IMG/VR virus record: IMGVR_UViG_3300034073_003340
Location: 310,001-374,000 of that record
Reading direction: 5' to 3' (one strand)
Length of the DNA: 64,000 nucleotides
Each line of letters opens with the position of its first letter. The stretch's first letter is position 1. Of this stretch, positions 7,591-29,219 are shown in pieces. A model generated the notes under the pieces. That model was not told where the DNA came from, did not search any database, and saw only the letters and a program-made list of their open reading frames with translations. The translations under genes and the position numbers were made by a program.

Positions 7591-7601
7591 ACTCTATTTA
7601 C

Positions 7602-7658: not shown

Positions 7659-7731
7659 GGTACGCCCACGAAGACTCGAACTCCGATAAACCGGTAATCG
7701 GCCGGTTGCCTTACCATTAGACGATGGGCGC
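7658..7731 (-). tRNA. tRNA-Ile(GAT), atypical C33
   Basis: ACCGG-CCGATTA-CCGGT arm, T-arm, CCA. Confidence 0.65.
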
Positions 7732-7735
7732 AAGC

Positions 7736-7919: not shown

Positions 7920-7954
7920 TTGAATATAACAAAGGACATGGCCTTTGTCAACAT

Positions 7955-8028
7955 TGGAGCGGATAGGGAGAATCGAACTCCCCTAACTACGTTGGCAACG
8001 TAACGCATTACCACTATGCTATACCCGC
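7955..8028 (-). tRNA. tRNA-Gly(GCC)
   Basis: TT-GCC-AA, U73, CCA. Confidence 0.9.
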
Positions 8029-8195
8029 ATGGTATTTGCTGACCGGAACCTCTCGCCAACAGCGCAAGCTCACCACACTTCCGTGCCCGGCCATCTTGCC
8101 ATTTTTGCTCGACCGCTAGGTAGTCTGTGCCTCTAAAGGTTTCACATCCTACATCAGCAGATTTGTTCTAACAAATCGTAATCAATTTGTCAATC

Positions 8196-8274
8196 TGGGG
8201 TGACCGGCGGGAATTGAACCCAGCACCTTCGGCTTCACAGGCCGCTATCCACAAACCAGTAGACCACGGTCACC
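8196..8274 (-). tRNA. tRNA-His(GTG)
   Basis: G-1:C73, CT-GTG-AA, CCA. Confidence 0.9.
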
Positions 8275-8281
8275 ATACAGA

Positions 8282-8692
8282 TCAGAGGGCTTTGCCCGTC
8301 CTCGCATCAACAATTCTTACTCCTGGAAAAACTGCTAGGCTACCACTTTCTCCACCTTGGAAATAAGCGTCGTATCCTTTTGCTCGGAGTTCTCTAAAAA
8401 ACCCCGGTATCTTTTCCATTTCACCATAATACTCTTCTATTTCATCCTCTGTGGGATAGTAGATATTATGAACATCCAAATAGCAAGCATAGGTTTCGGC
8501 CAAATTGTCCCCGTAGATTTTCTCACCCCAAGTGGGCGAATCAGAGAACCATAAACCAGCATCTGGTATCTTGAACTTGGTAATATTCTTGGTATTACTA
8601 CCATGATACATGACGCTCTTGACCTTGGAGCCAGAGAACGGATTTGGAACAAACTGCTCCGAATCTTCACCAATGATTTGTTTCCATCGCAT
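8282..8692 (-). CDS. ADP-ribosyltransferase-like late protein
   Basis: MYHGS...F...GLWFSDSP..(IY)G motifs; TAAATA-N4-ATG; N-terminus MRWKQIIGE. Confidence 0.55.
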   Translation of the reverse strand: MRWKQIIGEDSEQFVPNPFSGSKVKSVMYHGSNTKNITKFKIPDAGLWFSDSPTWGEKIYGDNLAETYACYLDVHNIYYPTEDEIEEYYGEMEKIPGFFRELRAKGYDAYFQGGESGSLAVFPGVRIVDARTGKAL

Positions 8693-8705
8693 TGAATATT
8701 TATTC

Positions 8706-8793
8706 TGCTGAGCGCGGAGTCGAACCGCCTACCGTTTATGGCATCGCCCATCACTTCTTATTGATTCGTACTGGCCCGGCCAGCTACTCAGCA
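8706..8793 (-). pseudogene. tRNA-like RNA without a recognisable anticodon arm
   Basis: TGCTGAG/CTCAGCA acceptor and GGCGG-TTCGACT-CCGC T-arm. Confidence 0.5.
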
Positions 8794-8870
8794 TGGCCCT
8801 CTGGACGGGACTCGAACCCGCCTCGACCCGGCGTGACAAGCCAGCGGCGTCACCCGACGCCTCCCAGAGG
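8794..8870 (-). tRNA. tRNA-Asp(GTC)
   Basis: CTGGC-TTGTCAC-GCCGG arm, G73, CCA. Confidence 0.9.
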
Positions 8871-8924
8871 ATATGGTTTTCTGCTCTCAGAATGTCACGC
8901 CTAGTTTCAGCGGCGTTCCCTCGG

Positions 8925-8997
8925 TGGAGACTAGGGGGATCGAACCCCTGACCTACGCAATGCCATCGCGTCGCTCTCCCAGCTGAGCTAAGTCCCC
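8925..8997 (-). tRNA. tRNA-Ala(GGC)
   Basis: G3:U70, AT-GGC-AT loop. Confidence 0.9.
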
Positions 8998-9007
8998 ATG
9001 GGAGGGG

Positions 9008-9632
9008 TCACAAGGACCCCTTGGCTAGGATCAGTCTTTCTAGACCAATTGCCCAGCCAACACCTTCGGCGTATCTACCGCCTCCAGCGATTTGTTTTTG
9101 CGCGCCAAGCTGCTCGCATACGCCTTCGAATCCATCCTCTATATAATAGGATAATCCGCGTTTTACAGCGTCATTGAGCTGCCACTCGACCCCTTGAGAG
9201 TCAATACAGCGTCGCAGTAGCTCAACAACTTCGTCGCGGTCCTCAGGGCCCTGTGAGCCCAGATACTCTACGCCAAATTGTATGAACTCCCGATACCGGC
9301 CTGCTTGTGGGCGCTCGTATCGGTAACAACGACTCACATAGAAGATCTTTAGTGTCTTTTCTGTGTGTCGCCATTTTTCTCGCCAGAGCTCTTGGATGAG
9401 CCCGGTGACTTCGGGAATCAAGCAAACATCTCGACCTCCCTTATCCTGGAAGGCCCACATTTGATTGATTATCTCTGGACCGGCTTTGTCGATGAAAGTC
9501 TGTTGTTCCCATATTGCGGGCAGAATAACCTCGTTGAAACCAGCTTCAGTGAACCAACCCCCTCAAGGAGTTGATTACATTGGTCATTTCACGGGCGTCG
9601 TCGCCCATGAGGACCCTTGTTCCCCTTAGCAT
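9008..9632 (-). CDS. hisS: histidyl-tRNA synthetase catalytic core only, frameshifted at a G5 run (9558-9562)
   Basis: MLRGTRVL, then after the shift GFNEVILP (motif 1), CYRYERPQAGRYREF (motif 2) and GGGRY...AIGLERL (motif 3); no anticodon-binding domain. Confidence 0.75.
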
Positions 9633-9668
9633 AAATCACCTCTTGTTTTCAGCGACCCTAATGGTCGT

Positions 9669-9742
9669 TGGATGCCCCTCTAGGGATCGAACCTAGGTTA
9701 CAACATTCAAAGTGTCGTGTCTTACCATTAGACGAAGGGGCA
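9669..9742 (-). tRNA. tRNA-Gln(TTG)
   Basis: CT-TTG-AA, CCA. Confidence 0.9.
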
Positions 9743-9753
9743 ATGTAGAGACC

Positions 9754-9813
9754 TGAGCAAGTTGATGCGGCGAGGGGTTCATCACCAAAAGATAACCCTC
9801 ATGCTTCGGCTCA
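9754..9813 (-). ncRNA. Y-RNA-like element C (no tRNA module)
   Basis: TGAGC-CGA-AGCATGAGGG-TTATC...CCCTCG...CAACTTGCTCA. Confidence 0.7.
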
Positions 9814-9819
9814 AATCTA

Positions 9820-9895
9820 TGGCTCCGGAGGAGGGACTCGAACCCCCAACATCCTCGTTAACAGCGAGGCGCATCTACCATTGAGCTACTCCGGA
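9820..9895 (-). tRNA. tRNA-Asn(GTT)
   Basis: CT-GTT-AA, G73, CCA. Confidence 0.92.
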
Positions 9896-9899
9896 ATGA

Positions 9900-10015
9900 A
9901 TATGAGCAAGTTTTGTAAAGGACTTTCCCAGTTGCCTGGGGTGATGGATTTGAACCATCTAGTTTTGATTTGAAGTCAAAAGTTTTTCCGATAACCCTTT
10001 ACTATCGGCTCATAT
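9900..10015 (-). ncRNA. Y-RNA-like element D with a TCA anticodon arm, T-arm and loop-closed acceptor
   Basis: ATATGAGC-CGA...GGGTTATC / CTTGCTCATAT; TTTTGA-CTTCAAA-TCAAAA arm. Confidence 0.75.
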
Positions 10016-10088
10016 GGCGCCCTCGGGAGGATTCGAACCTACCTCATCTTCCCTTCGCAGGGGAAGTGCATGATCCACATGCGAGGGC
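10015..10088 (-). tRNA. tRNA-Arg(GCG), short D-arm
   Basis: TTCCC-CTGCGAA-GGGAA arm, CCA. Confidence 0.8.
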
Positions 10089-10093
10089 ATTAG

Positions 10094-10165
10094 TAGTCCC
10101 GTGGTGACTCGAACACCAATCCGCCCTTTATGAGAGGGTGGCACTAACCTTTGTGCTACAGGACC
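10094..10165 (-). tRNA. tRNA with CAT anticodon (Met or Ile2)
   Basis: CT-CAT-AA loop with paired position 1. Confidence 0.8.
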
Positions 10166-10168
10166 ATA

Positions 10169-10244
10169 TGGTGAACCGGGCGGGACTCGAACCCGCGACC
10201 AGCTGATTAAAAGTCAGCTGCTCTACCGACTGAGCTACCGGTCC
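10169..10244 (-). tRNA. tRNA-Lys(TTT)
   Basis: Canonical, CT-TTT-AA, CCA. Confidence 0.95.
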
Positions 10245-10300
10245 ACTCCAGCTCTCTTTAGCTAAAGATTTCCGTTAGTCAAAGATTTTTCTTACACCAA

Positions 10301-10753
10301 CTACTTTAAAATCACCGGTATGTTCATTTTCTTAGCCAGATCTTCAACCTGGTCTCGAAAATATTCATCATCGTCCTGTCCACCTTCGTCTCTTATCCAT
10401 ATCTCCTTGACTGTAGAGGAGTTTATTGGATAAAGAGGTGATGGTTCTATCACCGTTTCATCTTCGGGACGGGTCCCCAAAATGATTCGGACTTCATCCC
10501 AACGATCAACCACTTGCGTTTCAAAACCCTTGGGGGCTTTTAGCACAAATGTCACATTGGCTGAATTCTTTACACCACCAGAGAACCAAAGATTGGGATC
10601 AGTAGTGGTTGAAACAAAATATTCAACATTGCGATCATGGTCGATGTCGTCATAGCTGGTATGGATGCCACCGTCTCTTAATATTGAAAGGGCAGGCCTC
10701 ATATCAGTAGCATGATACAAAACACCGCCAGTCAAGACTTCATATAACCGCAT
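10301..10753 (-). CDS. ART-fold-like late protein
   Basis: LYHAT...SIL..GG...FVSTTTDP...DEVRI; TAAATA-N5-ATG; N-terminus MRLYEVL. Confidence 0.5.
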   Translation of the reverse strand: MRLYEVLTGGVLYHATDMRPALSILRDGGIHTSYDDIDHDRNVEYFVSTTTDPNLWFSGGVKNSANVTFVLKAPKGFETQVVDRWDEVRIILGTRPEDETVIEPSPLYPINSSTVKEIWIRDEGGQDDDEYFRDQVEDLAKKMNIPVILK

Positions 10754-10765
10754 ATCTGTATTTAT

Positions 10766-10841
10766 TGGTGGGAGCCGTGGGGATTGAACCCACCTCGTTC
10801 TGCTTGTAAAACAGATGTCATCACCAGATGGCTAGACTCCC
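10766..10841 (-). tRNA. tRNA-Val(TAC)
   Basis: TT-TAC-AA, CCA. Confidence 0.88.
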
Positions 10842-10842
10842 A

Positions 10843-10917
10843 TGGTAGTCGGTGAGGGTTTCGAACCCCCGACCCTCTCGGTGTAAACGAGATGCTCTAC
10901 CACTGAGCTAACCGACC
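10843..10917 (-). tRNA. tRNA-Val(TAC)
   Basis: TT-TAC-AC, CCA. Confidence 0.92.
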
Positions 10918-10957
10918 ATGTTATCAACATAAACAATCCTATTTGGAATGTCAATAT

Positions 10958-11040
10958 TGGTGGGAAGCAATGGAGTCGAACCATTCCCCGAAAGCGCGGT
11001 TTTACAGACCGCTTGCTAGAACCGCTAGCTTTTACTTCCC
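10958..11040 (-). tRNA. tRNA-Tyr(GTA)
   Basis: GCGGT-CTGTAAA-ACCGC, CCA. Confidence 0.88.
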
Positions 11041-11054
11041 ATATTTGTAATCAG

Positions 11055-11126
11055 TAGCGCGGACGGGAATCGAACCCGCTTACACCTGGGTGAAAACCAA
11101 GCCGCCTGCCATTAGCGTTCCGCGCC
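11055..11126 (-). tRNA. tRNA-Glu(TTC)
   Basis: TT-TTC-AC loop; CCA not encoded. Confidence 0.8.
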
Positions 11127-11137
11127 ATGAAGTATTG

Positions 11138-11209
11138 TGACCCATAGGGGGATCGAACCCCTGTTCTCGCCTTGAAAGGGCGCGCTCTTAACCATTAGAG
11201 GAATGGGCC
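11138..11209 (-). tRNA. tRNA-Glu(TTC)
   Basis: CT-TTC-AA loop; ends CAA. Confidence 0.88.
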
Positions 11210-11240
11210 GTGTGGGCAAATACCCTGCTGACTTACAGCT

Positions 11241-11315
11241 TGGTGGACGATACAGGGATTGAACCTGTGACCTTTCCCATGTCAAGGGAACGCGCTACCG
11301 CTGCGCCAATCGTCC
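11241..11315 (-). tRNA. tRNA-Val(GAC)
   Basis: TTCCC-TTGACAT-GGGAA, CCA. Confidence 0.92.
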
Positions 11316-11318
11316 ATA

Positions 11319-11984
11319 TCAAGCAAACAAGGAATTTTTTGCTTGAATCTTATTACCATTTGAATCAATACCTGGATACCCGTGATTCTGTAAAATCACA
11401 TGGGCCGCTGCCTTGAGACGCAACCTCGGGAAATCTTTGGTATAGAGGATCAAAGAGTAGGTTAGCTTTTCTTCACAACCGCCACCTGATCCAGTATTGA
11501 TTCCGATCCTTTTTAGGTGGTCAGAATGAATTAAATGCTTTCGGTAAACATTTCCTTTGGGGCGAATTATAATCTTGCCCTCCCAACCCGCTTCCGGAAC
11601 GTGGGGTGACTCACTACTCCAACCAGTTTCTTTCTGACCAATAGGAGAAGTGTGGGTCGTTGGACAAAGTGGGTTGAAGTTCAAATTTGAGATTTCAAAT
11701 TCAACATAATCACTAGCGGTTGGATAATAGGGATTTTTAGCTTCCCAACGTGGTCCAAAGTGTATGGCGATCTTCATGTAATTGGCTGTCAGCCACTCCG
11801 CAATTGCGTTAGTGGTATCCAGACAATACAAAGACTTCAAAAACTCATCGAACTCAAGAGCCAACTTGGACTGTTCGCGCTTGAAGCGCAAATCAAAACG
11901 AGTTCGCTTCAAGTGCTCAGCATATTCACTGGAGCACTCAAAAAGCTTACCGGTCCAAGGGCACTTGTTAACAATTACCTTCAT
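11319..11984 (-). CDS. hypothetical protein
   Basis: 221-aa ORF filling the gap between tRNAs. Confidence 0.75.
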   Translation of the reverse strand: MKVIVNKCPWTGKLFECSSEYAEHLKRTRFDLRFKREQSKLALEFDEFLKSLYCLDTTNAIAEWLTANYMKIAIHFGPRWEAKNPYYPTASDYVEFEISNLNFNPLCPTTHTSPIGQKETGWSSESPHVPEAGWEGKIIIRPKGNVYRKHLIHSDHLKRIGINTGSGGGCEEKLTYSLILYTKDFPRLRLKAAAHVILQNHGYPGIDSNGNKIQAKNSLFA

Positions 11985-12020
11985 GCCAACTGAGTAGCAT
12001 AAAAAGACCAGTTGTCAACA

Positions 12021-12107
12021 TGGTTGCAGAGGTGGGATTTGAACCCACGTAGCCTTTCGGCAGCCTCGGTTATGAGCCGAGCGAGATAACCACTCCTCTA
12101 CCCTGCG
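12021..12107 (-). tRNA. initiator-like tRNA(CAT) with a long variable arm
   Basis: C1:A72, CT-CAT-AA, GCC-GAAA-GGC variable stem, CCA. Confidence 0.8.
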
Positions 12108-12109
12108 AG

Positions 12110-12182
12110 TGCAACCAGTTGGAATCGAACCAACGACACGCGCATTTTCAGTGCGCTGCTCTACCTGCTGAGCTATGGTTAC
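12110..12182 (-). tRNA. tRNA-Phe(GAA)
   Basis: GCGCA-CTGAAAA-TGCGC. Confidence 0.9.
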
Positions 12183-12183
12183 A

Positions 12184-12259
12184 TGGACCTAACAGGGGCA
12201 TTTCAGCCCTCACTTTCTGACCAGCGTGGCGGTCAGCCGTGCCTCTTACACTAGTTAGG
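12184..12259 (-). pseudogene. tRNA-like RNA, 8-nt anticodon loop, non-canonical T-loop
   Basis: CCTAAC/GTTAGG acceptor, CTGACC-GCCACGCT-GGTCAG, CCA. Confidence 0.5.
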
Positions 12260-12262
12260 ATT

Positions 12263-12339
12263 TGGTGCCGACACCTGGAATCGAACCAGGAAAATCACCC
12301 TTATGAGAGGTAATAGGAGACCGCCTCCTTCCTACCGGC
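12263..12339 (-). tRNA. tRNA with CAT anticodon (Met or Ile2)
   Basis: CT-CAT-AA, CCA. Confidence 0.78.
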
Positions 12340-12345
12340 AAAGTT

Positions 12346-12420
12346 TGGCACGGGTGGAGGGATTCGAACCCTCTCTGCATGGTTTTGGAGACCAGCCGAC
12401 TACCAGTATCATACACCCAT
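12346..12420 (-). tRNA. tRNA-Trp(CCA)
   Basis: CT-CCA-AA, G73, CCA. Confidence 0.88.
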
Positions 12421-12435
12421 ATGAAAGATTTTTAG

Positions 12436-12506
12436 CAGGGCCAGTAGGAATCGAACCCACAAGAGCTGGTTTGGAGCCAACCATGATACCATTTCATCAT
12501 AACCCT
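12436..12506 (-). tRNA. tRNA-Trp(CCA)
   Basis: CT-CCA-AA, G73. Confidence 0.85.
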
Positions 12507-12529
12507 ATAGGTCAGAAAAGCTGACACAG

Positions 12530-12598
12530 TGGAAGCCTGGGATTTGAACCCACCAAACGGCTTTTATTCACCGTCATGCACCAAAACATCTGGCCCCC
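12530..12598 (-). pseudogene. tRNA-like RNA, Ala-type acceptor, 8-nt loop
   Basis: GGGGGCC/GGCTTCC-A, ACGGT-GAATAAAA-GCCGT, TTCAAAT T-loop. Confidence 0.5.
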
Positions 12599-12626
12599 AT
12601 GGAGGACGGATAGTAATCCGTCTTTG

Positions 12627-12697
12627 CGCAGCATGGGGGAATCGAACCCACCACCTCCAGGATTCCGCCTGGTATGCTAAACCTACAACATAGCCGC
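12627..12697 (-). pseudogene. tRNA-like RNA, 6-nt anticodon loop (Pro-like)
   Basis: CCAGG-CGGAAT-CCTGG, TTCGATT T-loop, imperfect acceptor. Confidence 0.45.
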
Positions 12698-12698
12698 A

Positions 12699-12783
12699 TG
12701 GTGGGTAGGTGCGGAATCGAACCACTCCCCGAAGGATCTGATTTACAGTCAGACTGCCGTATCCAAGACGACTTTACCTACCC
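12699..12783 (-). tRNA. tRNA-Tyr(GTA)
   Basis: TCTGA-CTGTAAA-TCAGA, variable arm, CCA. Confidence 0.88.
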
Positions 12784-12787
12784 ATAG

Positions 12788-12867
12788 AGGACCAGGTGGG
12801 ACTCGAACCCACGATGTATAATAGCCGGTTAAAAGCCGACGCCGATCGCCGCTACGGTGACTGGTCC
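12788..12867 (-). tRNA. tRNA-Lys(TTT)
   Basis: CT-TTT-AA, extended variable loop. Confidence 0.8.
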
Positions 12868-12873
12868 AAAGAT

Positions 12874-12951
12874 TGGTCAGGGTGAGAGGACTCGAACCTC
12901 CACGATGTCCTCCTTCCAAAGGAGACGACTTACCAATTAGTCCACACCCTG
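12874..12951 (-). tRNA. tRNA-Pro(TGG)
   Basis: TT-TGG-AA, C1-G72, CCA. Confidence 0.9.
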
Positions 12952-13087
12952 ATGTGGTCAAGACTTGCTAGATATATTGCTGTCCCGCATGGGACACCTG
13001 CCCGTCGGGGAGTCGAACCCTTCCGGTTGGGGACTTGAACCCCGCTTCACCCTAGCACCTACCCACTCGGTAGCTTTCGCTAAGTCT

Positions 13088-13161
13088 TGGTGCTTCAGCA
13101 AGGAATCGAACCTTGGTCGTGCCATTATCAGTGGCGTGCTCTACCATTGAGCTACAGAAGC
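13088..13161 (-). tRNA. tRNA-Ile(GAT)
   Basis: CT-GAT-AA, CCA. Confidence 0.92.
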
Positions 13162-13166
13162 ATGAT

Positions 13167-13294
13167 CGATGAGCAAGGAGGTGTGCTAGGAGATTGACTA
13201 GGTCCTACCCCGGCCCTCATTGTGGACCGGCCGAGACTCGAACTCGGATCGTTTGTTTCACAGACAAAGATAACCTAACGCTATCGGCTCATCG
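13167..13294 (-). ncRNA. Y-RNA-like element E enclosing a permuted tRNA-His-like module (GTG)
   Basis: CGATGAGC-CGA...GGTTATC / CTTGCTCATCG; TTTGT-CTGTGAA-ACAAA arm, T-arm, CCGGTCC then GGGCCGG. Confidence 0.8.
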
Positions 13295-13295
13295 G

Positions 13296-13378
13296 TGCGG
13301 ATGACTGGACTCGAACCAGCACGCCACTAGGGCACCGCCTTCTGAGGACGGCAAGTCTACCAATTTCATCACATCCGC
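13296..13378 (-). tRNA. tRNA-Leu(CAG)
   Basis: CT-CAG-AA, long variable arm. Confidence 0.9.
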
Positions 13379-13400
13379 ATGTAAAAGGCTTGTGAACCTT

Positions 13401-13477
13401 TGGTGCTCCCCGTGGGACTCGAACCCACACTGAACGGAGTTTGAACCCGCTGACTCTACCAATTGGCCTAGAGGAGC
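13401..13477 (-). tRNA. tRNA-Leu(CAA), short variable arm
   Basis: TT-CAA-AC, CCA. Confidence 0.85.
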
Positions 13478-13496
13478 ATGACACTGGCTAACAGCT

Positions 13497-13581
13497 TGGT
13501 GCGGATAGTGGGACTCGAACCCACACGCCCTAAGGCACAGGCCTCTCATGCCTGCAAGTCTACCAGTTTCATCATATCCGC
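13497..13581 (-). tRNA. tRNA-Leu(GAG)
   Basis: AT-GAG-AG, long variable arm, CCA. Confidence 0.88.
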
Positions 13582-13652
13582 ATAGTCAACAAAGTGTCAA
13601 TATTAACGACCTTTACTCTTACCTCCCGGAACGGTCAAGCGGGCGACTTTGT

Positions 13653-13727
13653 TGGTGCCCCATCCAAGAATCGAACTTGGATCTACGCCTTACCAAGGCG
13701 TTATAATAACCATTATAATAATGGGGC
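13653..13727 (-). tRNA. tRNA-Thr(GGT)
   Basis: ACGCC-TTGGTAA-GGCGT, CCA. Confidence 0.92.
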
Positions 13728-13728
13728 A

Positions 13729-13803
13729 TGGAGCAGGTAGAGGGGATCGAACCCTCTTCTACGGTTTGGAAGACCATCATAATAACCAATATACTATACC
13801 TGC
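13729..13803 (-). tRNA. tRNA-Gly(TCC)
   Basis: CT-TCC-AA, U73, CCA. Confidence 0.9.
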
Positions 13804-13804
13804 A

Positions 13805-13881
13805 TGGTGTCCATGGAGAGATTCGAACTCTCACTGTCTGCATTCTAAGCGCAGTGCCTCTTCCGATTGGGCTACATGGAC
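13805..13881 (-). tRNA. tRNA-Leu(TAG), short variable arm
   Basis: CT-TAG-AA, CCA. Confidence 0.88.
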
Positions 13882-13882
13882 A

Positions 13883-13980
13883 TGGCAGAGAGCAGAGGAC
13901 TTGAACCTCAAGCGCATGTAGGGGTAAATGGCGCTCACATGATTTTCATCAGCCCAGCGACCTCGCTGGTTTTACTCTCT
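13883..13980 (-). tRNA. Ser-like tRNA (TGA uncertain), degenerate anticodon arm
   Basis: G73, CCA, very long variable arm, 7-bp D-stem; anticodon loop does not fit 7 nt. Confidence 0.5.
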
Positions 13981-13981
13981 A

Positions 13982-14058
13982 TGGTAGATGATCAGGGGTT
14001 CGAACCCTGGACCTACGGTTTAAGAGACCGTCGCTACTACCAACTGAGCTAATCATCC
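13982..14058 (-). tRNA. tRNA-Lys(CTT)
   Basis: ACGGT-CTCTTAA-ACCGT, CCA. Confidence 0.92.
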
Positions 14059-14180
14059 ATAAGGGGCGCCACTAGCTTGTTCGTTTCCCTGGCGTGCCAT
14101 GGCGCCCAGCCAACAGCACTAGGGAGAAACCTTGCTTAAGGGTTTCGTAAGCATTGCCCCGTCCGACAATACTTGGAACT

Positions 14181-14254
14181 TGGATGCCCATCGAGGATTC
14201 GAACCTCGGTTGACCGGTTCAGAGCCGGGTCTCTTACCGTTAGAGGAATGGGCA
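14181..14254 (-). tRNA. tRNA-Gln(CTG)
   Basis: CT-CTG-AA, CCA. Confidence 0.9.
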
Positions 14255-14268
14255 ATAAGAGATAAAGT

Positions 14269-14342
14269 TGGTAGCCCCAACGGGGATCGAACCCGTTTCG
14301 CCGCCTTGAGAGGGCAGCAGCTTACCAATAGAAGATGGGGCC
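14269..14342 (-). tRNA. tRNA-Glu(CTC)
   Basis: CT-CTC-AA, CCA. Confidence 0.88.
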
Positions 14343-14343
14343 A

Positions 14344-14431
14344 TGGAGGACCAGGTGGGGTTCGAACCCACAAGGGACTTTCATCCGTCGCATTAAGAGT
14401 GCGGTGAGCCAACCAACTGCTCAACTGGTCC
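14344..14431 (-). tRNA. tRNA-Lys(CTT) with a long variable arm
   Basis: CT-CTT-AA, GGA-TGAAAG-TCC variable stem, CCA. Confidence 0.8.
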
Positions 14432-14436
14432 ATGAT

Positions 14437-14573
14437 CAACGGGCAAGTGGTGAAAAGGATGTTTTTCCCGGCTTTACCAATTTGCCTATCCCCCGTCAAT
14501 GGTCGGGGGAGGAGGACTTGAACCTCCAAACAGGGTCTCCTAATGACGATAACCCTTATCAATCGGCCCGTTG
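14437..14573 (-). ncRNA. Y-RNA-like element F enclosing a permuted tRNA-Leu-like module (TAG)
   Basis: CAACGGGC-CGA...GGGTTATC / CTTGCCCGTTG; TCCCCCG-A-CCA-TTGA-CGGGGGA. Confidence 0.8.
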
Positions 14574-14648
14574 GTCTAGGTGAGAGGATTCGAACCTCCA
14601 ATCCCTTGCTCCCGAAGCAAGTGCCTTACCAGATTAGGCCACACCTAG
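14572..14648 (-). tRNA. tRNA-Pro(CGG)
   Basis: CTTGC-TTCGGGA-GCAAG, CCA. Confidence 0.92.
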
Positions 14649-14679
14649 ATGATAGTTTACCGACATTTCGGTCAATATC

Positions 14680-14756
14680 TGGCTCCCAATGTAGGACTCG
14701 AACCTACAGCATCGACGTTAACAGCGTCGCTCCCCTACCGACAGGGACCATTGGGA
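14680..14756 (-). tRNA. tRNA-Asn(GTT)
   Basis: CGACG-CTGTTAA-CGTCG, CCA. Confidence 0.9.
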
Positions 14757-14780
14757 ATGGAATAAACCACTTTGGTTTAT

Positions 14781-14852
14781 TGGTGGAGCATAAGAGAATC
14801 GAACTCTTCCTACCGCGGTGCAAGCGCAGCGACTAGACCCACTAGATGCCCC
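14781..14852 (-). tRNA. tRNA-Ala(TGC), short D-arm
   Basis: G3:U70, CT-TGC-AC, CCA, 72 nt. Confidence 0.8.
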
Positions 14853-14920
14853 AAAAGGGATTGCCCGCCCCATCGGGTTTGTCCGCATTAGGCTAACTTT
14901 CAGGACTTGTTAGCTAACAG

Positions 14921-14989
14921 TGGATATCTTGGACTCGAACCATTTTCTCCAGCTAGACGCTGGCGCATTACCATATATGCTACCAATCC
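14921..14989 (-). pseudogene. degenerate tRNA with a 5-nt loop containing CTA
   Basis: CCAGC-GTCTA-GCTGG, D-arm and T-loop present, weak acceptor. Confidence 0.45.
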
Positions 14990-14992
14990 ATT

Positions 14993-15069
14993 TGGTCGGG
15001 ATAGCAGGACTCGAACCTGCGACCTCTTGTCCCCCAGACAAACGCGCTACCAGGCTGCGCTATACCCCG
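14993..15069 (-). tRNA. tRNA-Pro(GGG)
   Basis: CT-GGG-GG, C1-G72, CCA. Confidence 0.92.
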
Positions 15070-15506
15070 ATGATTTGGCCTTTTGTTTGTGATATGCGAA
15101 ATATATTCCCTGGCACTTCAGGGTGATCCGCATGAGGAAGGATTACTCCTTTCCCCTGTGCCTAAAGAACGGCGCATCACTACACCGTCCAATTTTTACT
15201 CCCACGTTCTCTCCGTGGTTTCATCCTTGGCCCGCCCATATGGGTTTATTTTAAGTGGCTATCCCGCAGTCTCGTTCCGCATATACCACTTGACAATTCA
15301 GGGAACCTGCACTAGGCATTTTCCTTGAAAGGTCGATCTATATCACACTAAGAAACTTTCGTTCCTTGGTGCTACGTCGTTGTGCCTTGTGGACATCAAC
15401 TCCGTTTTTGAGTTTAGCAGCTTCTTTTTGCTGTGTCAACAACTTTTTTGTTGCTGCTAAACTTTTTTGTTTGTGCCTTCTGCGCTAGCATCGGGCGGTT
15501 AAAAGG

Positions 15507-15533
15507 AAAGCCCCGGTAGTTTCCTACCGGGGC
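15507..15533 (-). terminator. intrinsic terminator
   Basis: GCCCCGGTAG/CTACCGGGGC followed by a T-rich tract on the minus strand. Confidence 0.65.
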
Positions 15534-15566
15534 CTTGTTTCCTTTTATGGGATGGACTTTTTGGAG

Positions 15567-15770
15567 TTATCCTCCGTGTCCCTCCTGGAAACTGGCCCCG
15601 GTCGTATCAAGATTCGCAGGCTTATTATAACCGACGAGTGTCCCGACTGGGCGGGTAATTTGTTCGCTACGCTGCCATTCGGCGCCCATAGCGGAGGCGG
15701 TAAACAACACGGCTTTCAGGCCGGCCTTTCCGCATTCCATATGGGTTCCAATATGCGACATAGAAATCAA
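15567..15770 (-). CDS. possible small late protein
   Basis: TATAAATA upstream, GAGG SD and a downstream terminator; no recognisable motif. Confidence 0.35.
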   Translation of the reverse strand: MISMSHIGTHMECGKAGLKAVLFTASAMGAEWQRSEQITRPVGTLVGYNKPANLDTTGASFQEGHGG

Positions 15771-15958
15771 TTACCTCAAATTCTGTGATGCCCGAATTGG
15801 CATCTGTGTTTCTATTTATACTGAACGATTCATTCGTCAAGCACAAAATGACCACAAAGCAAAAAAGTTTTCTACTTTGCTTCCAAGGGGCTTAATGTAC
15901 TCCTTGGACTTTAGTTGCAAGCCCTTAGAAAAATAAATTTCAAAGCCTACAACCTTTG

Positions 15959-16031
15959 TGGAGAATATCGGACTCGAACCGATCACCTACGCCTTGCAAA
16001 AGCGTCGCTCTCCCAGATGAGCTAATCCCCC
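15959..16031 (-). tRNA. tRNA-Ala(TGC)
   Basis: G3:U70, TT-TGC-AA; ends CAA. Confidence 0.9.
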
Positions 16032-16195: not shown

Positions 16196-17254
16196 TTATA
16201 CCTGGTTAATTTCTATAAGCTCAAAAGCTAGCAAAACCCTATTTCTATCAACCAGTGCCTTTATGAACTGCTGAGTGGCATTTTCCCATGTAAACTTTTC
16301 GCTATGAGCCACAACGTCCCAGCGAGGAATAACAGAGCAAACATTGATAGCCATGGCCAAGTCGTCATGGGTATATCCATTGAAGCATCCTTCAATTATA
16401 TCCTTGGGACCAGTAACCGGATAGGCAGCAACCGGCGTTCCACAACGCATTGCTTCAATCATGACTAATCCAAAGGTATCTGACTTACTGGGGAAAACAA
16501 ACACATCAGCATAACTGTACCAACGCGCCAGATCTTCACCTTGTTTAGATCCCAAAAATATCACATCAGGATATTTGGCCTTATAGGTTTCCAACATTGG
16601 CCCATCGCCGATTTGGATTTTTGTTCCAGGCATCTTGAGTTCATAAAAAGCTTCAAGATTCTTTTCAACGCTAACACGACCAACATTGAGATAAAATGGG
16701 CGTGGCATATCCTCAGATTTCATAGGTGATCTTTCCCGAGGATAAAACAATTTGGTATCGACACCTCGCCCCCAAACAATGAGCTTGTGCTCAGGGAAAC
16801 CATGAGAGATCATTTCTTCTTTCATGGATTTGGTTGTGACTAGAATATAGGAATCATTGCGGTAAACATGACGAAGCCACTTCCATGCGAGATTTTTACC
16901 AAATCCAACGCGGGCTTCAATATACTCAGCAAATTTGGTATGGAAACTTGATGACCATTTTTCCCCTCGACGCTTTAAGATTTTACGCATGGAGAGACCA
17001 AGCGGGCCTTCGGTGGCAATATGAACCATAGCGGGGTTTTCAGCAGCAAGAAAACTCTCGAGCACTGCTGATGGAAAAAGGGCAAGACGTATCTCGGAAT
17101 AACCAGGGCACGGGATATTTCTGAATAGTCCAGGATGGACTACCTTGACACGATATCCCTGATTCTTCAATTCTTTTATTGTATTCTTAAGGGTAGTAAC
17201 CACCCCATTGACTTGAGGCTCCCAAGCATCGGTTACGATCAGGATTTTCTTCAT
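16196..17254 (-). CDS. GT4 (GT-B) glycosyltransferase, Agt-like glycolipid synthase
   Basis: VTDAWEPQVNGVV, HIATEGPLG, VGRVSVEKNL and SDTFGLVMIEAM..G.PV motifs. Confidence 0.85.
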   Translation of the reverse strand: MKKILIVTDAWEPQVNGVVTTLKNTIKELKNQGYRVKVVHPGLFRNIPCPGYSEIRLALFPSAVLESFLAAENPAMVHIATEGPLGLSMRKILKRRGEKWSSSFHTKFAEYIEARVGFGKNLAWKWLRHVYRNDSYILVTTKSMKEEMISHGFPEHKLIVWGRGVDTKLFYPRERSPMKSEDMPRPFYLNVGRVSVEKNLEAFYELKMPGTKIQIGDGPMLETYKAKYPDVIFLGSKQGEDLARWYSYADVFVFPSKSDTFGLVMIEAMRCGTPVAAYPVTGPKDIIEGCFNGYTHDDLAMAINVCSVIPRWDVVAHSEKFTWENATQQFIKALVDRNRVLLAFELIEINQV

Positions 17255-18078
17255 TGCTTATCCTCCAAGAGCACAATAGGTTGCTCGTATGTATGAGCTT
17301 CCAAGAGCCCAGCGTTCCAAGTTGCTAGTTCCAGCAGCTTGCCTTCGCGCCATTCAAGAAGGACGAATCGACCATCATGATGTTCCGCAAGGGCTGTTTT
17401 GCTTTCTACAAAATCGCCATCATTCATATAGAGAATGCCGTCGATCATTCTAATCTCAGCATGATGAATATGACCAGCAATGATACCATCATAATTTCTA
17501 ATCTTACATGCTTCTGCCAAACCTTCTTCAAACTTGCCAATAAAACTAGCCGCGTTCTTGACTTTGGTCTTCACGTATTTGCTGAGACTCCAGTAACCCA
17601 TTTTGAACCTACGACGAAACCAATTTAGATAACGATTGATTTCAATAAGAGTAACATAGCCCCAGTCACCCAACTTTGCCAACCATTTGTGATAAGTGGT
17701 GATAATATCGTATAGGTCACCGTGCGTTACTAACATGCGCTTACCAGAAACCGTGGTATAATCGTATTCCTGGACTATCTCAACATCACCGAGCATCAAA
17801 GGTAGGTAATCTCTTACAGTCTCATCGTGATTTCCAGGTATATAGACTACGCGAGTGCCTTTGCGGCTTTTACGTAGGATCTTTTGAACAACTTCGTTGT
17901 GGGCTTTTGGCCAATACCATTTCTTACTCAACTGCCACATATCAATTATGTCGCCGACTAAGAAGAGATTATCGGATTCAGTGTTGCGGAGAAACGCCAA
18001 CAACTCCTGAGCGCTCGCGCCCTTGGTTCCAAGGTGTAGATCAGAGATCCAGATACTTTTGTAAATTTTCGGTTCCAT
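17251..18078 (-). CDS. plcP: metallophosphoesterase, PlcP/LpxH-like
   Basis: ISDLHLG, LVGDIIDMW, WYWP..HNEVVQK, PGNHDE, THGD and GHIH motifs; coupled to the GT4 gene. Confidence 0.7.
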   Translation of the reverse strand: MEPKIYKSIWISDLHLGTKGASAQELLAFLRNTESDNLFLVGDIIDMWQLSKKWYWPKAHNEVVQKILRKSRKGTRVVYIPGNHDETVRDYLPLMLGDVEIVQEYDYTTVSGKRMLVTHGDLYDIITTYHKWLAKLGDWGYVTLIEINRYLNWFRRRFKMGYWSLSKYVKTKVKNAASFIGKFEEGLAEACKIRNYDGIIAGHIHHAEIRMIDGILYMNDGDFVESKTALAEHHDGRFVLLEWREGKLLELATWNAGLLEAHTYEQPIVLLEDKQ

Positions 18079-18162
18079 GCTTCCTAATTAGCTAATTAGG
18101 AAACACAAAATCTATTTTAATGGAATCGTAACAAAGACCCAGTTGCTGATTGAGCATTCAGC

Positions 18163-18480: not shown

Positions 18481-18648
18481 ATGCGTATTCGAGAATTCCT
18501 ACCGGAGAATTGGTGGAAAGACCTCGATCCTGGTTTTCTTGGGATGATGGGTTATACAGAAGAAACCCAGAAACCCAAAGAAGATCCAGCCGATCTTGTG
18601 TCCAGTGTAGCCAGTGACGTTAAGCAGATTCGCCGTCGTCCCCGCTAA
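18481..18648 (+). CDS. 55-aa late protein absent from the ORF track
   Basis: TAAATA-N4-ATG; MRIREFLPE matches the shared N-terminal motif. Confidence 0.65.
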   Translation: MRIREFLPENWWKDLDPGFLGMMGYTEETQKPKEDPADLVSSVASDVKQIRRRPR

Positions 18649-19060
18649 GCTTTGCTATCCGCCTTGCTTCTGCCCTAGCTGTCGCTTCAGCACCCGTCTT
18701 TTTGAAATGACAAGGCTGACATAACGTCTGAAGGTTGGGCAATTTCCAGTATTCAAGGTCACCATTGCTTTCAATCAATGGCTTCTTATGATCTAAGTGC
18801 CAGACATCTTTGCCCTTACGAGCACATTGATGTCCACACTCCCTACAGATGCCCTTATCTCTTCTATAAACGACCTTACGGGTTACTGCTGGCCAGTGGA
18901 GTATTTTGTATTCCTTGACGCATGATGGGTGCCAATTGGCCCTTTTATTCAGCGTTTGGCCGTCTTTCTTAAAAATCAATTGACCACACCAACGACATTG
19001 TCCCGGTAGTGGGTTATGATAATGCGGAGGCTTTGGTGGTTCTCTATGTGAGCTCATCAC
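18620..19060 (-). CDS. HNH endonuclease
   Basis: CRECG...WHLDHKKPL...NLQTLCQPCHFKKT. Confidence 0.85.
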   Translation of the reverse strand: MMSSHREPPKPPHYHNPLPGQCRWCGQLIFKKDGQTLNKRANWHPSCVKEYKILHWPAVTRKVVYRRDKGICRECGHQCARKGKDVWHLDHKKPLIESNGDLEYWKLPNLQTLCQPCHFKKTGAEATARAEARRIAKLSGDDGESA

Positions 19061-28201: not shown

Positions 28202-28464
28202 TTATGAAAGGGAAAGTGACCAAAAGAATTTCCTATGACCTTGCGAATAGTCATCGCCTCTTCTTTGGAAATCTCTTCGACAGTGAAGTCATCTTCATCA
28301 AACTCACCTTCGTCCCAACCTTCGTTGGTTCCAAACATATATGAATGTTCGGAAAGATCACCTTTGGTTCTAAGCCAGTCAGCCTCACTATTGAAGATTT
28401 TGAATCCGTCAACATCGAACTCGTCACCCCAATCCTTGCTGAACTTTACTAGAACCGGCATCAA
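28198..28464 (-). CDS. hypothetical protein
   Basis: Translationally coupled ORF. Confidence 0.65.
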   Translation of the reverse strand: MMPVLVKFSKDWGDEFDVDGFKIFNSEADWLRTKGDLSEHSYMFGTNEGWDEGEFDEDDFTVEEISKEEAMTIRKVIGNSFGHFPFHN

Positions 28465-29219
28465 AGTTCTCCCTTAAATTTTACAAGGTTGGAGGGTCCA
28501 GGATCGAATCCTCTGGCTTCCTGAAAAAGTTGACGAGTAGACGTTTCGATATCGTTTTCCAAGCGAGCCATGAACTCCTCCTTATTAAGGCCAGGCTCTA
28601 TAGGAGGTAGATATTCCACTACCGCATTACCAGGAGTCTTGCGAAAATTGGCCTGCTCCCAGAAACAGCCCAGATTTGTTCCTGCTGGGACCACTGGGAC
28701 ATTGTGAGTGTTATACATGGACCAAATGCCCAGTCGATAGCGATGATGCTCACCGGGCTTGGACAGGTGTCCCTCGGGATAGATGAGGATTCGCTTACCT
28801 GCCCGAAACGCTCGGTCCGCGCCCTTCATCAAGTCTTCTTTGGATTGGCCTCCGCCACAAGAATCAACCACAATGGCGCCGATTTTACGCAAGAGTCCCT
28901 TGAGCAGAGGGATCTTTTCAAGATGGTTACCAGTGACAAAAACAAGGTCCTTGACCACACTAAAGCTGGCGAAGCCGTCACCCCACGACTGGTGCTTGGG
29001 AGCAAGAATGAATGGACCGCTAGGTAGATTTTCCAGTCCTCGATGCTCGACCCGGATACCAGCAAACCAACGCATAGCAGTCAACATCCGCTGAGCATAG
29101 CGTCGCACGATCCAACGGGTAATGAATTTGCCTGGGAAGATGACACTCAGTGTCGCCATAAACACATACGCTATGCTGATGACGTAATAGGCCAGCGTGA
29201 AGATGGTGCTGCGGATCAT
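28461..29219 (-). CDS. plsC: 1-acyl-sn-glycerol-3-phosphate acyltransferase
   Basis: KHQSWGD (HxxxxD), IYPEG and VPVVP motifs, N-terminal TM segment. Confidence 0.85.
   Translation of the reverse strand: MIRSTIFTLAYYVISIAYVFMATLSVIFPGKFITRWIVRRYAQRMLTAMRWFAGIRVEHRGLENLPSGPFILAPKHQSWGDGFASFSVVKDLVFVTGNHLEKIPLLKGLLRKIGAIVVDSCGGGQSKEDLMKGADRAFRAGKRILIYPEGHLSKPGEHHRYRLGIWSMYNTHNVPVVPAGTNLGCFWEQANFRKTPGNAVVEYLPPIEPGLNKEEFMARLENDIETSTRQLFQEARGFDPGPSNLVKFKGEL

What the first reader, a model, noticed from the sequence alone, without database searches (positions are those of the whole stretch)
16196..18078. Phage-encoded PlcP/Agt-like lipid-remodelling pair, with a plsC gene nearby
Seen: overlapping metallophosphoesterase and GT4 genes, and an acyltransferase at 28461-29219. 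Established: in phosphate-starved alphaproteobacteria, PlcP releases diacylglycerol from phospholipids and Agt converts it to glycolipids. Inference: the phage could mine host membranes for phosphate or change the envelope during infection.
Basis: partly seen in the sequence, partly recalled or inferred. Interest (0 to 1): 0.6.

Follow-up and report, generated by a model that had tools for sequence, protein, structure and literature searches.

The report
Huge phage carries PlcP–Agt lipid-remodelling operon
A 436-kb bacteriophage carries an intact, conserved copy of the two-gene bacterial operon (PlcP phospholipase C plus Agt glycosyltransferase) that swaps membrane phospholipids for phosphorus-free glycolipids, so the phage may draw on its host's membrane phosphorus during infection.

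Summary
A 275-aa metallophosphoesterase (17251-18078, minus strand) and a 352-aa GT4 glycosyltransferase (16196-17254, minus strand) overlap by ATGA. A PF01553 acyltransferase lies at 28461-29219. The window belongs to a complete 435,856-bp phage genome.

- **Not LpxH:** the esterase scores 41-52 bits on LpxH models whose cut-offs are 134 and 190. Genuine LpxH from five Burkholderiaceae genomes scores 223-243, while their PlcP-like paralogues score 31-37.
- **PlcP-like:** it is 50-59% identical to alpha- and betaproteobacterial proteins. In 52 of 74 such loci these are followed directly by a GT4 that is 41-48% identical to the phage one. This includes a Paraburkholderia esterase-GT4-DagK operon arranged like the characterised B. 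cenocepacia plcP-agt-dagK.
- **Agt-like:** the GT4 carries the Agt-group signature of the SAR11 enzyme: a His/Asp dyad, GRVxxEKN and FPSxxDTFG.
- **Conserved in phages:** both genes form monophyletic phage clades under strong purifying selection. The pair recurs in other huge phages of 257-480 kb.

Enzymatic activity, expression and the phosphorus-mining purpose remain inferred. No Pho box was found, and the acyltransferase link is weak. I found no published description of a phage-encoded PlcP-Agt pair; phage homologues are filed as "LpxH".

The parts
17251..18078 (-). PlcP-like metallophosphoesterase (275 aa), the predicted phospholipase C that releases diacylglycerol
   Evidence: - Pfam Metallophos.
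- All metal-binding motif residues are invariant in 63 homologues: D13, H15, D43, N83, H84, H119, H203, H205.
- It scores 41-52 bits on LpxH models with cut-offs of 134 and 190.
- It is 50-59% identical to cellular PlcP-like proteins.
- AF2 model: pLDDT 85.5, LpxH-like fold with a helical insert at residues 125-193.
16196..17254 (-). Agt-like GT4 glycosyltransferase (352 aa), the predicted diacylglycerol glucosyl/glucuronosyl-transferase
   Evidence: - Pfam Glyco_transf_4 plus Glycos_transf_1.
- It has H105, GRVSVEKN (192-199), FPSKSDTFG (254-262, with D259), E267, R163 and W323. These match the GTcp/Agt signature.
- It is 41-48% identical to GT4 genes directly downstream of cellular PlcP-like genes.
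- Some homologues are named by JGI as 1,2-diacylglycerol 3-alpha-glucosyltransferase/glucuronosyltransferase.
- Its C-terminus is about 11-17 aa longer than in homologues.
17251..17254 (-). ATGA stop/start overlap joining the two genes into one translationally coupled unit
   Evidence: Read directly from the sequence. The same abutting arrangement occurs in L004, L096 and L097.
18073..18110 (-). Stable hairpin covering the Shine-Dalgarno sequence and start codon of the esterase gene. It includes a perfect 18-bp palindrome at 18083-18100.
   Evidence: - Fold energy is -16.8 kcal/mol with z -4.5.
- The palindrome is unique in the window.
- Hairpins of different sequence sit at the same place in L004 (z -4.5) and L098 (z -4.1), but not in L096.
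- Its function is unknown; translational control is my inference.
28461..29219 (-). LPLAT/PlsC-like acyltransferase (252 aa) with an N-terminal hydrophobic segment. It is possibly, but not demonstrably, part of the same lipid theme.
   Evidence: - PF01553 at 67.9 bits.
- HX4D motif (H76-D81) and YPEGH motif are present.
- It is the only PF01553 gene in the genome.
- Homologues of 67-88% identity lie on the same phage contigs that carry the pair.
- It falls below the PlsC and OlsA model cut-offs.

Best explanation
The two overlapping genes are a phage-borne copy of the bacterial plcP-agt lipid-renovation operon.

**Mechanism.**
1. Inferred from homology: the esterase acts as a Mn-type metallophosphoesterase phospholipase C on host glycerophospholipids. 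It yields diacylglycerol plus a phosphorylated head group.
2. Inferred from homology: the GT4 uses host UDP-glucose or UDP-glucuronate to turn that diacylglycerol into monoglucosyl- or glucuronosyl-diacylglycerol. This keeps the bilayer intact.
3. Inferred purpose: during infection this moves membrane phosphorus into the soluble pool for synthesis of a very large genome. Each 436-kb copy needs about 0.87 million P atoms.

**What is shown:** gene integrity, family placement, operon architecture, conservation and purifying selection in a clade of huge phages.

**What is not shown:** enzyme activities, timing of expression, and any benefit to the phage.
For: **Family placement of the esterase**
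- It falls far below LpxH model cut-offs.
- In five Burkholderiaceae genomes true LpxH scores 223-243 bits, and a second, PlcP-like paralogue scores 31-37 bits, as the phage protein does.
- In 121 genomes of that family the hits are bimodal: about 47-54% identity for the full-length PlcP-like orthologue against 21-31% for the second, LpxH-like hit.
- In the tree LpxH sits across a very long branch.

**Operon architecture**
- 52 of 74 cellular loci have a homologous GT4 directly downstream.
- Paraburkholderia nodosa has esterase-GT4-DagK, the arrangement of the characterised B. cenocepacia plcP-agt-dagK (PMC13691135).
- Characterised PlcPs are only 46-47% identical to each other, and Agts 35-41% (PMC8528852). 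The phage proteins therefore lie within the family's range.

**GT4 signature**
- The Agt/GTcp motifs and dyad are present.

**Conservation**
- The phage clades are monophyletic for both genes (99 and 100 SH-aLRT).
- Window against L101: 92% amino-acid identity, yet 45-49% of conserved codons carry synonymous changes and dS is saturated.

**Recurrence in phages**
- At least 157 IMG/VR contigs encode PlcP-like proteins.
- 19 of the best 80 have the GT4 adjacent, including contigs of 455, 379, 480, 257 and 348 kb.

**Phosphorus link in other phages**
- The homologue in Pelagibacter phage Mosig sits beside pstS.
- The 379-kb contig L104 has a pstS homologue about 5 kb from its pair.
- The window's phage also carries phoH.
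Against: - No enzymatic, lipidomic or expression data exist, and no RNA run holds the sequence.
- No Pho box lies upstream. Pho-box-like matches in the window are at chance level.
- No characterised PlcP or Agt sequence could be fetched for direct comparison, so the link runs through synteny, motifs and published identity ranges.
- PlcP releases phospho-head groups, not free phosphate. The phage has no PstS, DagK or UDP-sugar enzymes, so it depends on the host for the rest.
- The host is unknown, so it is also unknown whether it lacks its own plcP-agt.
- One relative (L098, 315 kb) and most viral PlcP-like genes lack the GT4. The glycosyltransferase step is therefore dispensable for some phages.
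Confidence: 0.62

Rival explanations
1. The enzymes are PlcP/Agt-like as proposed, but the selected benefit is envelope remodelling rather than phosphorus supply. Possible benefits include stabilising or reshaping the membrane during a long infection, changing sensitivity to other phages, predators or cationic peptides, or providing lipid for phage-induced membrane structures.
For: - There is no Pho box upstream.
- Glycolipids made by Agt change resistance to polymyxin (PMC8528852). The abstract of PMC9457565 (listed) reports a predator-prey trade-off of lipid remodelling; I read only that abstract.
- The phage was found in subsurface/soil and wastewater metagenomes, and wastewater is not obviously P-poor.
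- A conserved acyltransferase in the same clade hints at a broader lipid programme.
Against: - In bacteria this operon is a phosphate-starvation response.
- Two other phage lineages place the esterase next to or near pstS.
- These glycolipids are membrane lipids, not known surface receptors.
Confidence: 0.25
2. The pair is an LpxH-type lipid A enzyme plus an LPS or cell-wall glycosyltransferase that modifies the host surface, as current phage annotations imply.
For: - Database names for homologues are 'UDP-2,3-diacylglucosamine diphosphatase/LpxH' and 'glycosyltransferase involved in cell wall biosynthesis'.
- LpxH is the closest solved fold.
- Published phage papers list lpxH under LPS genes.
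Against: - The esterase scores 41-52 bits against cut-offs of 134 and 190.
- It is 17-18% identical to LpxH structures, with phmmer E only about 1e-4.
- Genomes that have the PlcP-like gene also have a separate true LpxH.
- The GT4 has the Asp-type dyad and motifs of the DAG-dependent Agt group.
- Its cellular relatives sit in plcP-agt(-dagK) operons.
Confidence: 0.05
3. The genes are passenger DNA: recently captured host sequence, an assembly chimera, or decaying genes with no role in infection.
For: - The genes are of cellular origin.
- They sit in an accessory region next to an HNH endonuclease and a tRNA array.
- One relative has lost the GT4.
Against: - The genome is complete, with terminal repeats and a terminase.
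- The nearest cellular proteins are only 59% and 48% identical.
- The phage clades are monophyletic and go down to about 60% identity within the clade.
- Synteny is kept across contigs from different samples.
- Purifying selection is strong, and all catalytic residues are intact.
Confidence: 0.04

Closest known systems
Bacterial PlcP-Agt(-DagK) lipid-renovation operon: B. cenocepacia BCAL2364-2366, P. aeruginosa PA3219-PA3218, SAR11 HTCC7211 PB7211_983/960, S. meliloti PlcP with A. tumefaciens Agt
   Same: - Same gene order, esterase then GT4, and tight coupling.
- Same protein families and complete catalytic motifs.
- Identity to cellular operon members is 50-59% for the esterase and 41-48% for the GT4. 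That is at or above the identity between characterised members (46-47% and 35-41%).
   Different: - It is encoded by a 436-kb lytic-type phage genome.
- It has no recognisable Pho box and no dagK.
- An SD-occluding hairpin lies upstream.
- The phage sequences form their own clades outside the sampled cellular diversity.
- The esterase has a clade-specific C-terminal beta extension, and the GT4 a short C-terminal tail.
LpxH (UDP-2,3-diacylglucosamine diphosphatase)
   Same: - Same metallophosphoesterase superfamily and the closest solved fold (TM 0.5-0.6).
- Both have a helical insert in the core, the region that holds the lipid in LpxH.
   Different: - 17-18% identity.
- Far below the curated model cut-offs.
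- It is a separate paralogue in genomes that have both.
- The operon partner differs.
'Putative UDP-2,3-diacylglucosamine hydrolase' of Pelagibacter phage Mosig EXVC030M (Mosig_00120), and the homologue in Synechococcus phage S-SRM01
   Same: - These are phage-encoded PlcP-like esterases, 48% and 35% identical to the window's protein.
- In Mosig the gene lies next to a phosphate-binding protein gene.
   Different: - They have no adjacent Agt-like GT4.
- They lie in T4-like (Kyanoviridae) genomes of 141-241 kb.
- They are annotated as LpxH.
Phosphate-regulon auxiliary genes of marine phages (pstS, phoA, phoH). This comparison rests on my own knowledge of the field.
   Same: The presumed purpose is the same: easing phosphorus limitation of phage replication.
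   Different: Those genes act on external phosphate uptake. This module would draw on the host's own membrane and replace the lipid.

Membership tests
PlcP (metallophosphoesterase-type phospholipase C of lipid renovation) | Calcineurin-like metallophosphoesterase with complete metal-binding motifs | tested here: met
   Pfam Metallophos. D13, H15, D43, N83, H84, H119, H203 and H205 are invariant in 63 homologues including the phage protein.
PlcP (metallophosphoesterase-type phospholipase C of lipid renovation) | Belongs to the PlcP-like paralogue group, distinct from LpxH | tested here: met
   - It scores 41-52 bits on LpxH models, like the cellular PlcP-like paralogues (31-37). True LpxH scores 223-243.
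- The tree separates LpxH by a very long branch.
PlcP (metallophosphoesterase-type phospholipase C of lipid renovation) | Operon with a downstream gene for a phosphorus-free lipid (the agt 'type 2' context) | tested here: met
   ATGA overlap with an Agt-like GT4. The same order occurs in 52 of 74 cellular loci. The context is defined in PMC4796936.
PlcP (metallophosphoesterase-type phospholipase C of lipid renovation) | Direct sequence similarity to an experimentally characterised PlcP | tested here: inconclusive
   No characterised sequence could be fetched with these tools. The proxy is 54% identity to the esterase of a Paraburkholderia esterase-GT4-DagK operon with the layout of B. cenocepacia plcP-agt-dagK.
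PlcP (metallophosphoesterase-type phospholipase C of lipid renovation) | Pho-box / PhoB-dependent induction | tested here: not met
   No Pho-box-like site lies between 18079 and 18600, and matches across the window are at chance level. The host's own Pho box is unknown, and a phage promoter need not use it.
PlcP (metallophosphoesterase-type phospholipase C of lipid renovation) | Releases diacylglycerol from PE/PG/PC | not testable with these tools
   This needs an enzyme assay or lipidomics.
Agt / GTcp group of GT4 (diacylglycerol glucosyl/glucuronosyl-transferase) | GT-B GT4 architecture | tested here: met
   Glyco_transf_4 (residues 15-168) plus Glycos_transf_1 (182-294).
Agt / GTcp group of GT4 (diacylglycerol glucosyl/glucuronosyl-transferase) | His-Asp catalytic dyad (Asp rather than the usual Glu), motifs GRVAXEKN and FPSXTDTFG, Gly-rich motif, conserved Arg and Trp of the DAG groove | tested here: met
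   - H105, G17, GRVSVEKN, FPSKSDTFG (D259), E267, R163 and W323 are all invariant in the alignment.
- The features come from the GTcp paper.
- Residue correspondence was made by motif, not by alignment to GTcp itself.
Agt / GTcp group of GT4 (diacylglycerol glucosyl/glucuronosyl-transferase) | Clusters with GT4 genes encoded next to PlcP | tested here: met
   - It is 41-48% identical to the downstream neighbours of cellular PlcP-like genes.
- Hits include Methylophaga homologues and JGI entries named DAG glucosyl/glucuronosyl-transferase.
- The phage clade sits beside these on the tree.
Agt / GTcp group of GT4 (diacylglycerol glucosyl/glucuronosyl-transferase) | Makes MGDG and/or GADG from DAG and UDP-sugar | not testable with these tools
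   This needs heterologous expression and lipid mass spectrometry.
LpxH | Score above the curated NCBIfam cut-offs (NF003743 134 bits; TIGR01854 190 bits) | tested here: not met
   It scores 52.2 and 41.3 bits, and 41.1 bits in the genome search.
PlsC / LPLAT acyltransferase (gene at 28461-29219) | HX4D and (F/Y)PEG acyltransferase motifs | tested here: met
   H76-D81 and YPEGH are present. PF01553 scores 67.9 bits.
PlsC / LPLAT acyltransferase (gene at 28461-29219) | Score above the 1-acylglycerol-3-phosphate acyltransferase model cut-off (TIGR00530, 103 bits) | tested here: not met
   It scores 49.1 bits. The OlsA models give 32 and 16.5 bits against a cut-off of 300. It is therefore a generic LPLAT of unassigned substrate.

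The most novel reading that the evidence does not exclude
Several unrelated lineages of huge phages (257-480 kb), and many smaller aquatic phages, carry PlcP-type phospholipases. About a quarter of the best-matching IMG/VR contigs also have the Agt partner. On this reading they form a previously unrecognised class of auxiliary metabolic module. It dismantles the host's own phospholipid membrane for phosphorus and back-fills it with glycolipid, so viral infection itself would drive phospholipid-to-glycolipid shifts seen in nature.
Probability: 0.4. Interest if true: 0.75.

Novelty: new member of a known kind. Interest (0 to 1): 0.55.

Why it matters
Phosphorus is thought to limit phage replication more sharply than host growth, and a 436-kb genome is an extreme phosphorus sink. 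Known phage answers (pstS, phoA) act on external phosphate. A phage-borne PlcP-Agt module would instead tap the cell's largest internal, non-nucleic-acid phosphorus store.

By my own rough estimate from textbook cell composition, an E. coli-sized cell holds about 2 x 10^7 phospholipids. That is the phosphorus of roughly 25 copies of this genome.

Two practical consequences follow.

- Viral "lpxH" auxiliary genes reported under LPS biosynthesis are probably misfiled, at least those of this PlcP-like type.
- Glycolipid signals used as markers of phosphorus stress in environmental lipidomics could partly reflect infection.

The hypothesis can be tested directly with heterologous expression and lipid mass spectrometry.

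Tried and rejected
- **DNA search:** a megablast of the region against 50,697 phage records found nothing.
- **Fetching characterised sequences:** I tried to reach characterised PlcP/Agt sequences (S. meliloti, MED193, HTCC7211, PAO1, K56-2) through genome handles.
- **Pho box:** no site lies upstream, and window-wide matches are at chance. The sigma-70 promoter and terminator scans were uninformative.
- **Companion genes in the whole phage genome:** no PstS, DagK, UDP-glucose dehydrogenase or sugar-nucleotidyl-transferase was found. Only PhoH is present.
- **PHROGs:** there is no specific family for any of the three lipid genes.
- **pstS near viral PlcP-like genes:** it was seen only in L104 and L108 and in Mosig. 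It is not a general feature.
- **dN/dS:** no number could be given because synonymous sites are saturated, so raw synonymous-difference fractions are reported instead.
- **Independent acquisitions:** the IMG/VR tree cannot count these. The cellular sample is biased towards the window's nearest relatives and several rows have long branches.
  - Read laying, because no RNA holder exists.
  - Complex prediction, because no binding claim is made.
  - the large representative protein search, because the word search answered the question.
  - any alternative genetic code.
Full report
**1. Observation**

On the minus strand, ORF 17251-18078 (275 aa) is a calcineurin-like metallophosphoesterase. ORF 16196-17254 (352 aa) is a GT4 glycosyltransferase, and ORF 28461-29219 (252 aa) is a PF01553 acyltransferase. 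The esterase stop codon and the GT4 start codon share the letters ATGA at 17251-17254, which is the usual mark of a translationally coupled operon.

The window is bases 310001-374000 of a 435,856-bp IMG/VR virus record with direct terminal repeats, rated complete.

- The record encodes a large terminase that scores 768 bits on phrog_36964.
- The terminase's nearest isolates are RaK2-like jumbo phages of Klebsiella and Escherichia, at 43-46% identity.
- Fifty tRNA genes fill 484-16031, directly downstream of the pair.

**2. The esterase is PlcP-like, not LpxH**

Databases name its homologues LpxH. The evidence points elsewhere.

- It scores only 52 and 41 bits on the two NCBIfam LpxH models, whose cut-offs are 134 and 190.
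- Against solved LpxH chains, phmmer gives E of about 1e-4.
- In five Burkholderiaceae genomes a genuine LpxH scores 223-243 bits on TIGR01854. A second paralogue scores 31-37 bits, much like the phage protein's 41.
- Searching 121 genomes of that family with the phage protein gave a bimodal result. Full-length matches were about 47-54% identical, and weak second matches were 21-31% identical.
- In a tree rooted on those LpxH sequences, LpxH lies across a very long branch. The window's protein sits in a clade of 32 metagenomic sequences (SH-aLRT 99) beside the cellular PlcP-like group.
- All metallophosphoesterase metal-binding residues are invariant across 63 homologues.
- An AlphaFold model (pLDDT 85.5) has LpxH as its 25 best PDB matches, at 17-18% identity and TM 0.5-0.6.
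- The model carries a two-helix insert (residues 125-193) within the core. This is the region that forms the lipid chamber in LpxH, so a lipid substrate is plausible. That last step is my inference.

**3. The operon matches the bacterial plcP-agt operon**

A scan of one genome per species returned 80 alpha- and betaproteobacterial loci whose esterase is 50-59% identical to the phage protein.

- In 52 of the 74 loci with enough downstream sequence, the next gene on the same strand is a GT4 that is 41-48% identical to the phage GT4.
- In Paraburkholderia nodosa the order is esterase, GT4, prokaryotic diacylglycerol kinase.
- That is the layout of the experimentally characterised plcP-agt-dagK operon of Burkholderia cenocepacia K56-2 (PMC13691135).
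- plcP followed by agt is the commonest context described for marine bacteria (PMC4796936).
- Characterised PlcPs share only 46-47% identity with each other, and characterised Agts 35-41% (PMC8528852). The phage proteins therefore lie within the family's own range.

I could not fetch a characterised sequence for direct alignment. This link therefore rests on synteny, motifs and published ranges.

**4. The GT4 carries the Agt-group signature**

The biochemical study of the SAR11 HTCC7211 enzyme GTcp defines the group by five features:

- a His104-Asp256 dyad, in which Asp cannot be replaced by Glu;
- the motif GRVAXEKN;
- the motif FPSXTDTFG;
- a Gly-rich motif;
- conserved Arg163 and Trp320 in the diacylglycerol groove.

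The phage protein has H105, G17, GRVSVEKN, FPSKSDTFG with D259, E267, R163 and W323. All are invariant in an alignment with phage and cellular homologues. Homologues include Methylophaga proteins, a genus named in the GTcp paper. They also include entries that JGI names 1,2-diacylglycerol 3-alpha-glucosyltransferase/glucuronosyltransferase. Its N-terminus aligns with homologues from the first ATG, and its C-terminus is about 11-17 residues longer.

**5. Conservation in phages**

The same contigs hold the close homologues of both genes.

- A 480,938-bp scaffold keeps the pair, the upstream HNH gene and a gap in called genes after the pair, where the window has its tRNA array. A 958-kb contig also listed for the same protein may be a doubled copy of this scaffold; I did not check it.
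- A 197-kb contig and a 12.6-kb contig keep the pair among small ORFan genes, a radical-SAM gene, adenylosuccinate synthetase and ribonucleotide reductase.
- The GT4 tree gives a monophyletic phage clade of 26 sequences (SH-aLRT 100).
- Between the window and IMG/VR contig L101 the proteins are 92% identical. Even so, 49% and 45% of the conserved codons differ synonymously and dS is saturated. This indicates strong purifying selection.
- One 315-kb relative has the esterase but no trace of the GT4.

Across IMG/VR the picture is broader.

- At least 157 contigs encode a PlcP-like protein.
- Of the best 80, 19 have the GT4 adjacent. These include contigs of 455, 379, 480, 257 and 348 kb that fall in several separate branches.
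- Cellular sampling in that tree is biased, so I do not count acquisitions.

Among 50,697 deposited phage records:

- only Pelagibacter phage Mosig (48%), Synechococcus phage S-SRM01 (35%) and a few uncultured fragments have the esterase;
- none has an Agt-like GT4 above 34% identity;
- PHROGs has no specific family for any of the three genes.

**6. Link to phosphorus**

Evidence for a link:

- In Mosig the esterase gene is next to a phosphate-binding protein gene.
- In the 379-kb contig L104 a pstS homologue lies about 5 kb from the pair.
- The window's phage has phoH.

Evidence against a link, or missing:

- There is no Pho box upstream.
- The genome has no pstS, dagK or UDP-sugar genes.
- The phage was found in subsurface/soil metagenomes of one study and wastewater metagenomes of another, and no RNA run holds it.
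- The host is unknown.

**7. The acyltransferase**

- It has an N-terminal hydrophobic segment, the HX4D motif and a YPEGH motif.
- It is the only PF01553 gene in the genome.
- It has 67-88% identical homologues on the same phage contigs that carry the pair.
- Cellular homologues are 53-57% identical. The one whose context I examined is stand-alone, beside an enoyl-CoA hydratase gene and the suf operon.
- It falls below the PlsC and OlsA model cut-offs.

It is an intact lysolipid-type acyltransferase conserved in the clade. Nothing ties it mechanistically to the pair.

**8. Mechanism proposed**

1. The esterase cleaves host PE, PG or PC to diacylglycerol plus a phospho-head group.
2. The GT4 glycosylates the diacylglycerol with host UDP-glucose or UDP-glucuronate.
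3. Host phosphatases or central metabolism recover the phosphorus, which supports replication of a genome needing about 0.87 million P atoms per copy.

Steps 1 and 2 are inferred from family membership, and step 3 is inferred from ecology. The main rival keeps steps 1 and 2 but attributes the benefit to envelope properties. The LpxH/LPS reading and the passenger-DNA reading are poorly supported.

**9. Novelty**

- No paper in the searched library combines plcP with viral auxiliary genes.
- Phage papers that mention lpxH file it under LPS or receptor modification.
- The enzymes and the operon are well known in bacteria.
- What appears new is their presence as a conserved, selected module in huge phages, and the reassignment of viral "LpxH".

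I rate this as a new member of a known kind, of moderate interest.

Noticed in passing
window 484-16031 (minus strand): An array of 50 tRNA genes covers all 20 amino acids, with several duplicates (for example four Met-CAT and four Gly). It lies immediately downstream of the lipid pair.
   Followed up: partly
window 18073-18110 (minus strand); L004 about 7969-8006; L098 about 6972-7008: A strong hairpin (-17 to -21 kcal/mol, z about -4.1 to -4.5) buries the Shine-Dalgarno sequence and start codon of the esterase gene. It appears in three relatives with different sequences but is absent in L096. In the window it contains a perfect 18-bp palindrome at 18083-18100. This suggests translational control or an RNA-processing site.
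   Followed up: partly
window 18620-19060 (minus strand): An HNH endonuclease gene lies just upstream of the pair. It is also present at the same relative position in L004 and L098, so it may be a mobile-element neighbour of the accessory region.
   Followed up: no
window 39377-40552 and 41541-42386 (minus strand): A full-length glutathionylspermidine-synthase-like preATP-grasp protein (PF03738, 457 bits) lies near a DUF1190 protein. From memory, this pairing resembles the YgiC/YgiB-type gene pairs of Gammaproteobacteria.
   Followed up: no
window 26774-27259 and 27296-28201 (minus strand): An AAA_33/zeta-toxin-like kinase and an ADP-ribosylglycohydrolase lie next to each other, just downstream of the acyltransferase (a small 88-aa ORF, 28198-28464, lies between).
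   Followed up: no
window 52544-53797 (minus); 56357-58228 and 62046-63398 (plus): The phage encodes a ClpX-type unfoldase with a zinc finger. It also encodes a split type II topoisomerase (GyrB-like and ParC/GyrA-like) whose two parts are about 3.8 kb apart.
   Followed up: no
L098 7001-8838 (315-kb relative): This relative has the esterase but no GT4, and no remnant in the about 1-kb gap that follows. A T5orf172 (GIY-YIG-like) gene lies just beyond, so the GT4 may have been displaced by a mobile endonuclease.
   Followed up: partly
L104 4120-4917 and 10001-11801 (IMG/VR contig of 378,912 bp): An unrelated huge phage carries a PlcP-like gene, a more divergent GT4 (34.5% identical to the window's) and a pstS homologue within about 6 kb.
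   Followed up: partly
L001 (Pelagibacter phage Mosig, MT647606.1 94129-94866): The gene annotated 'putative UDP-2,3-diacylglucosamine hydrolase' is 48% identical to the window's esterase and sits beside the phage pstS. It is most likely a PlcP-type phospholipase rather than LpxH.
   Followed up: partly
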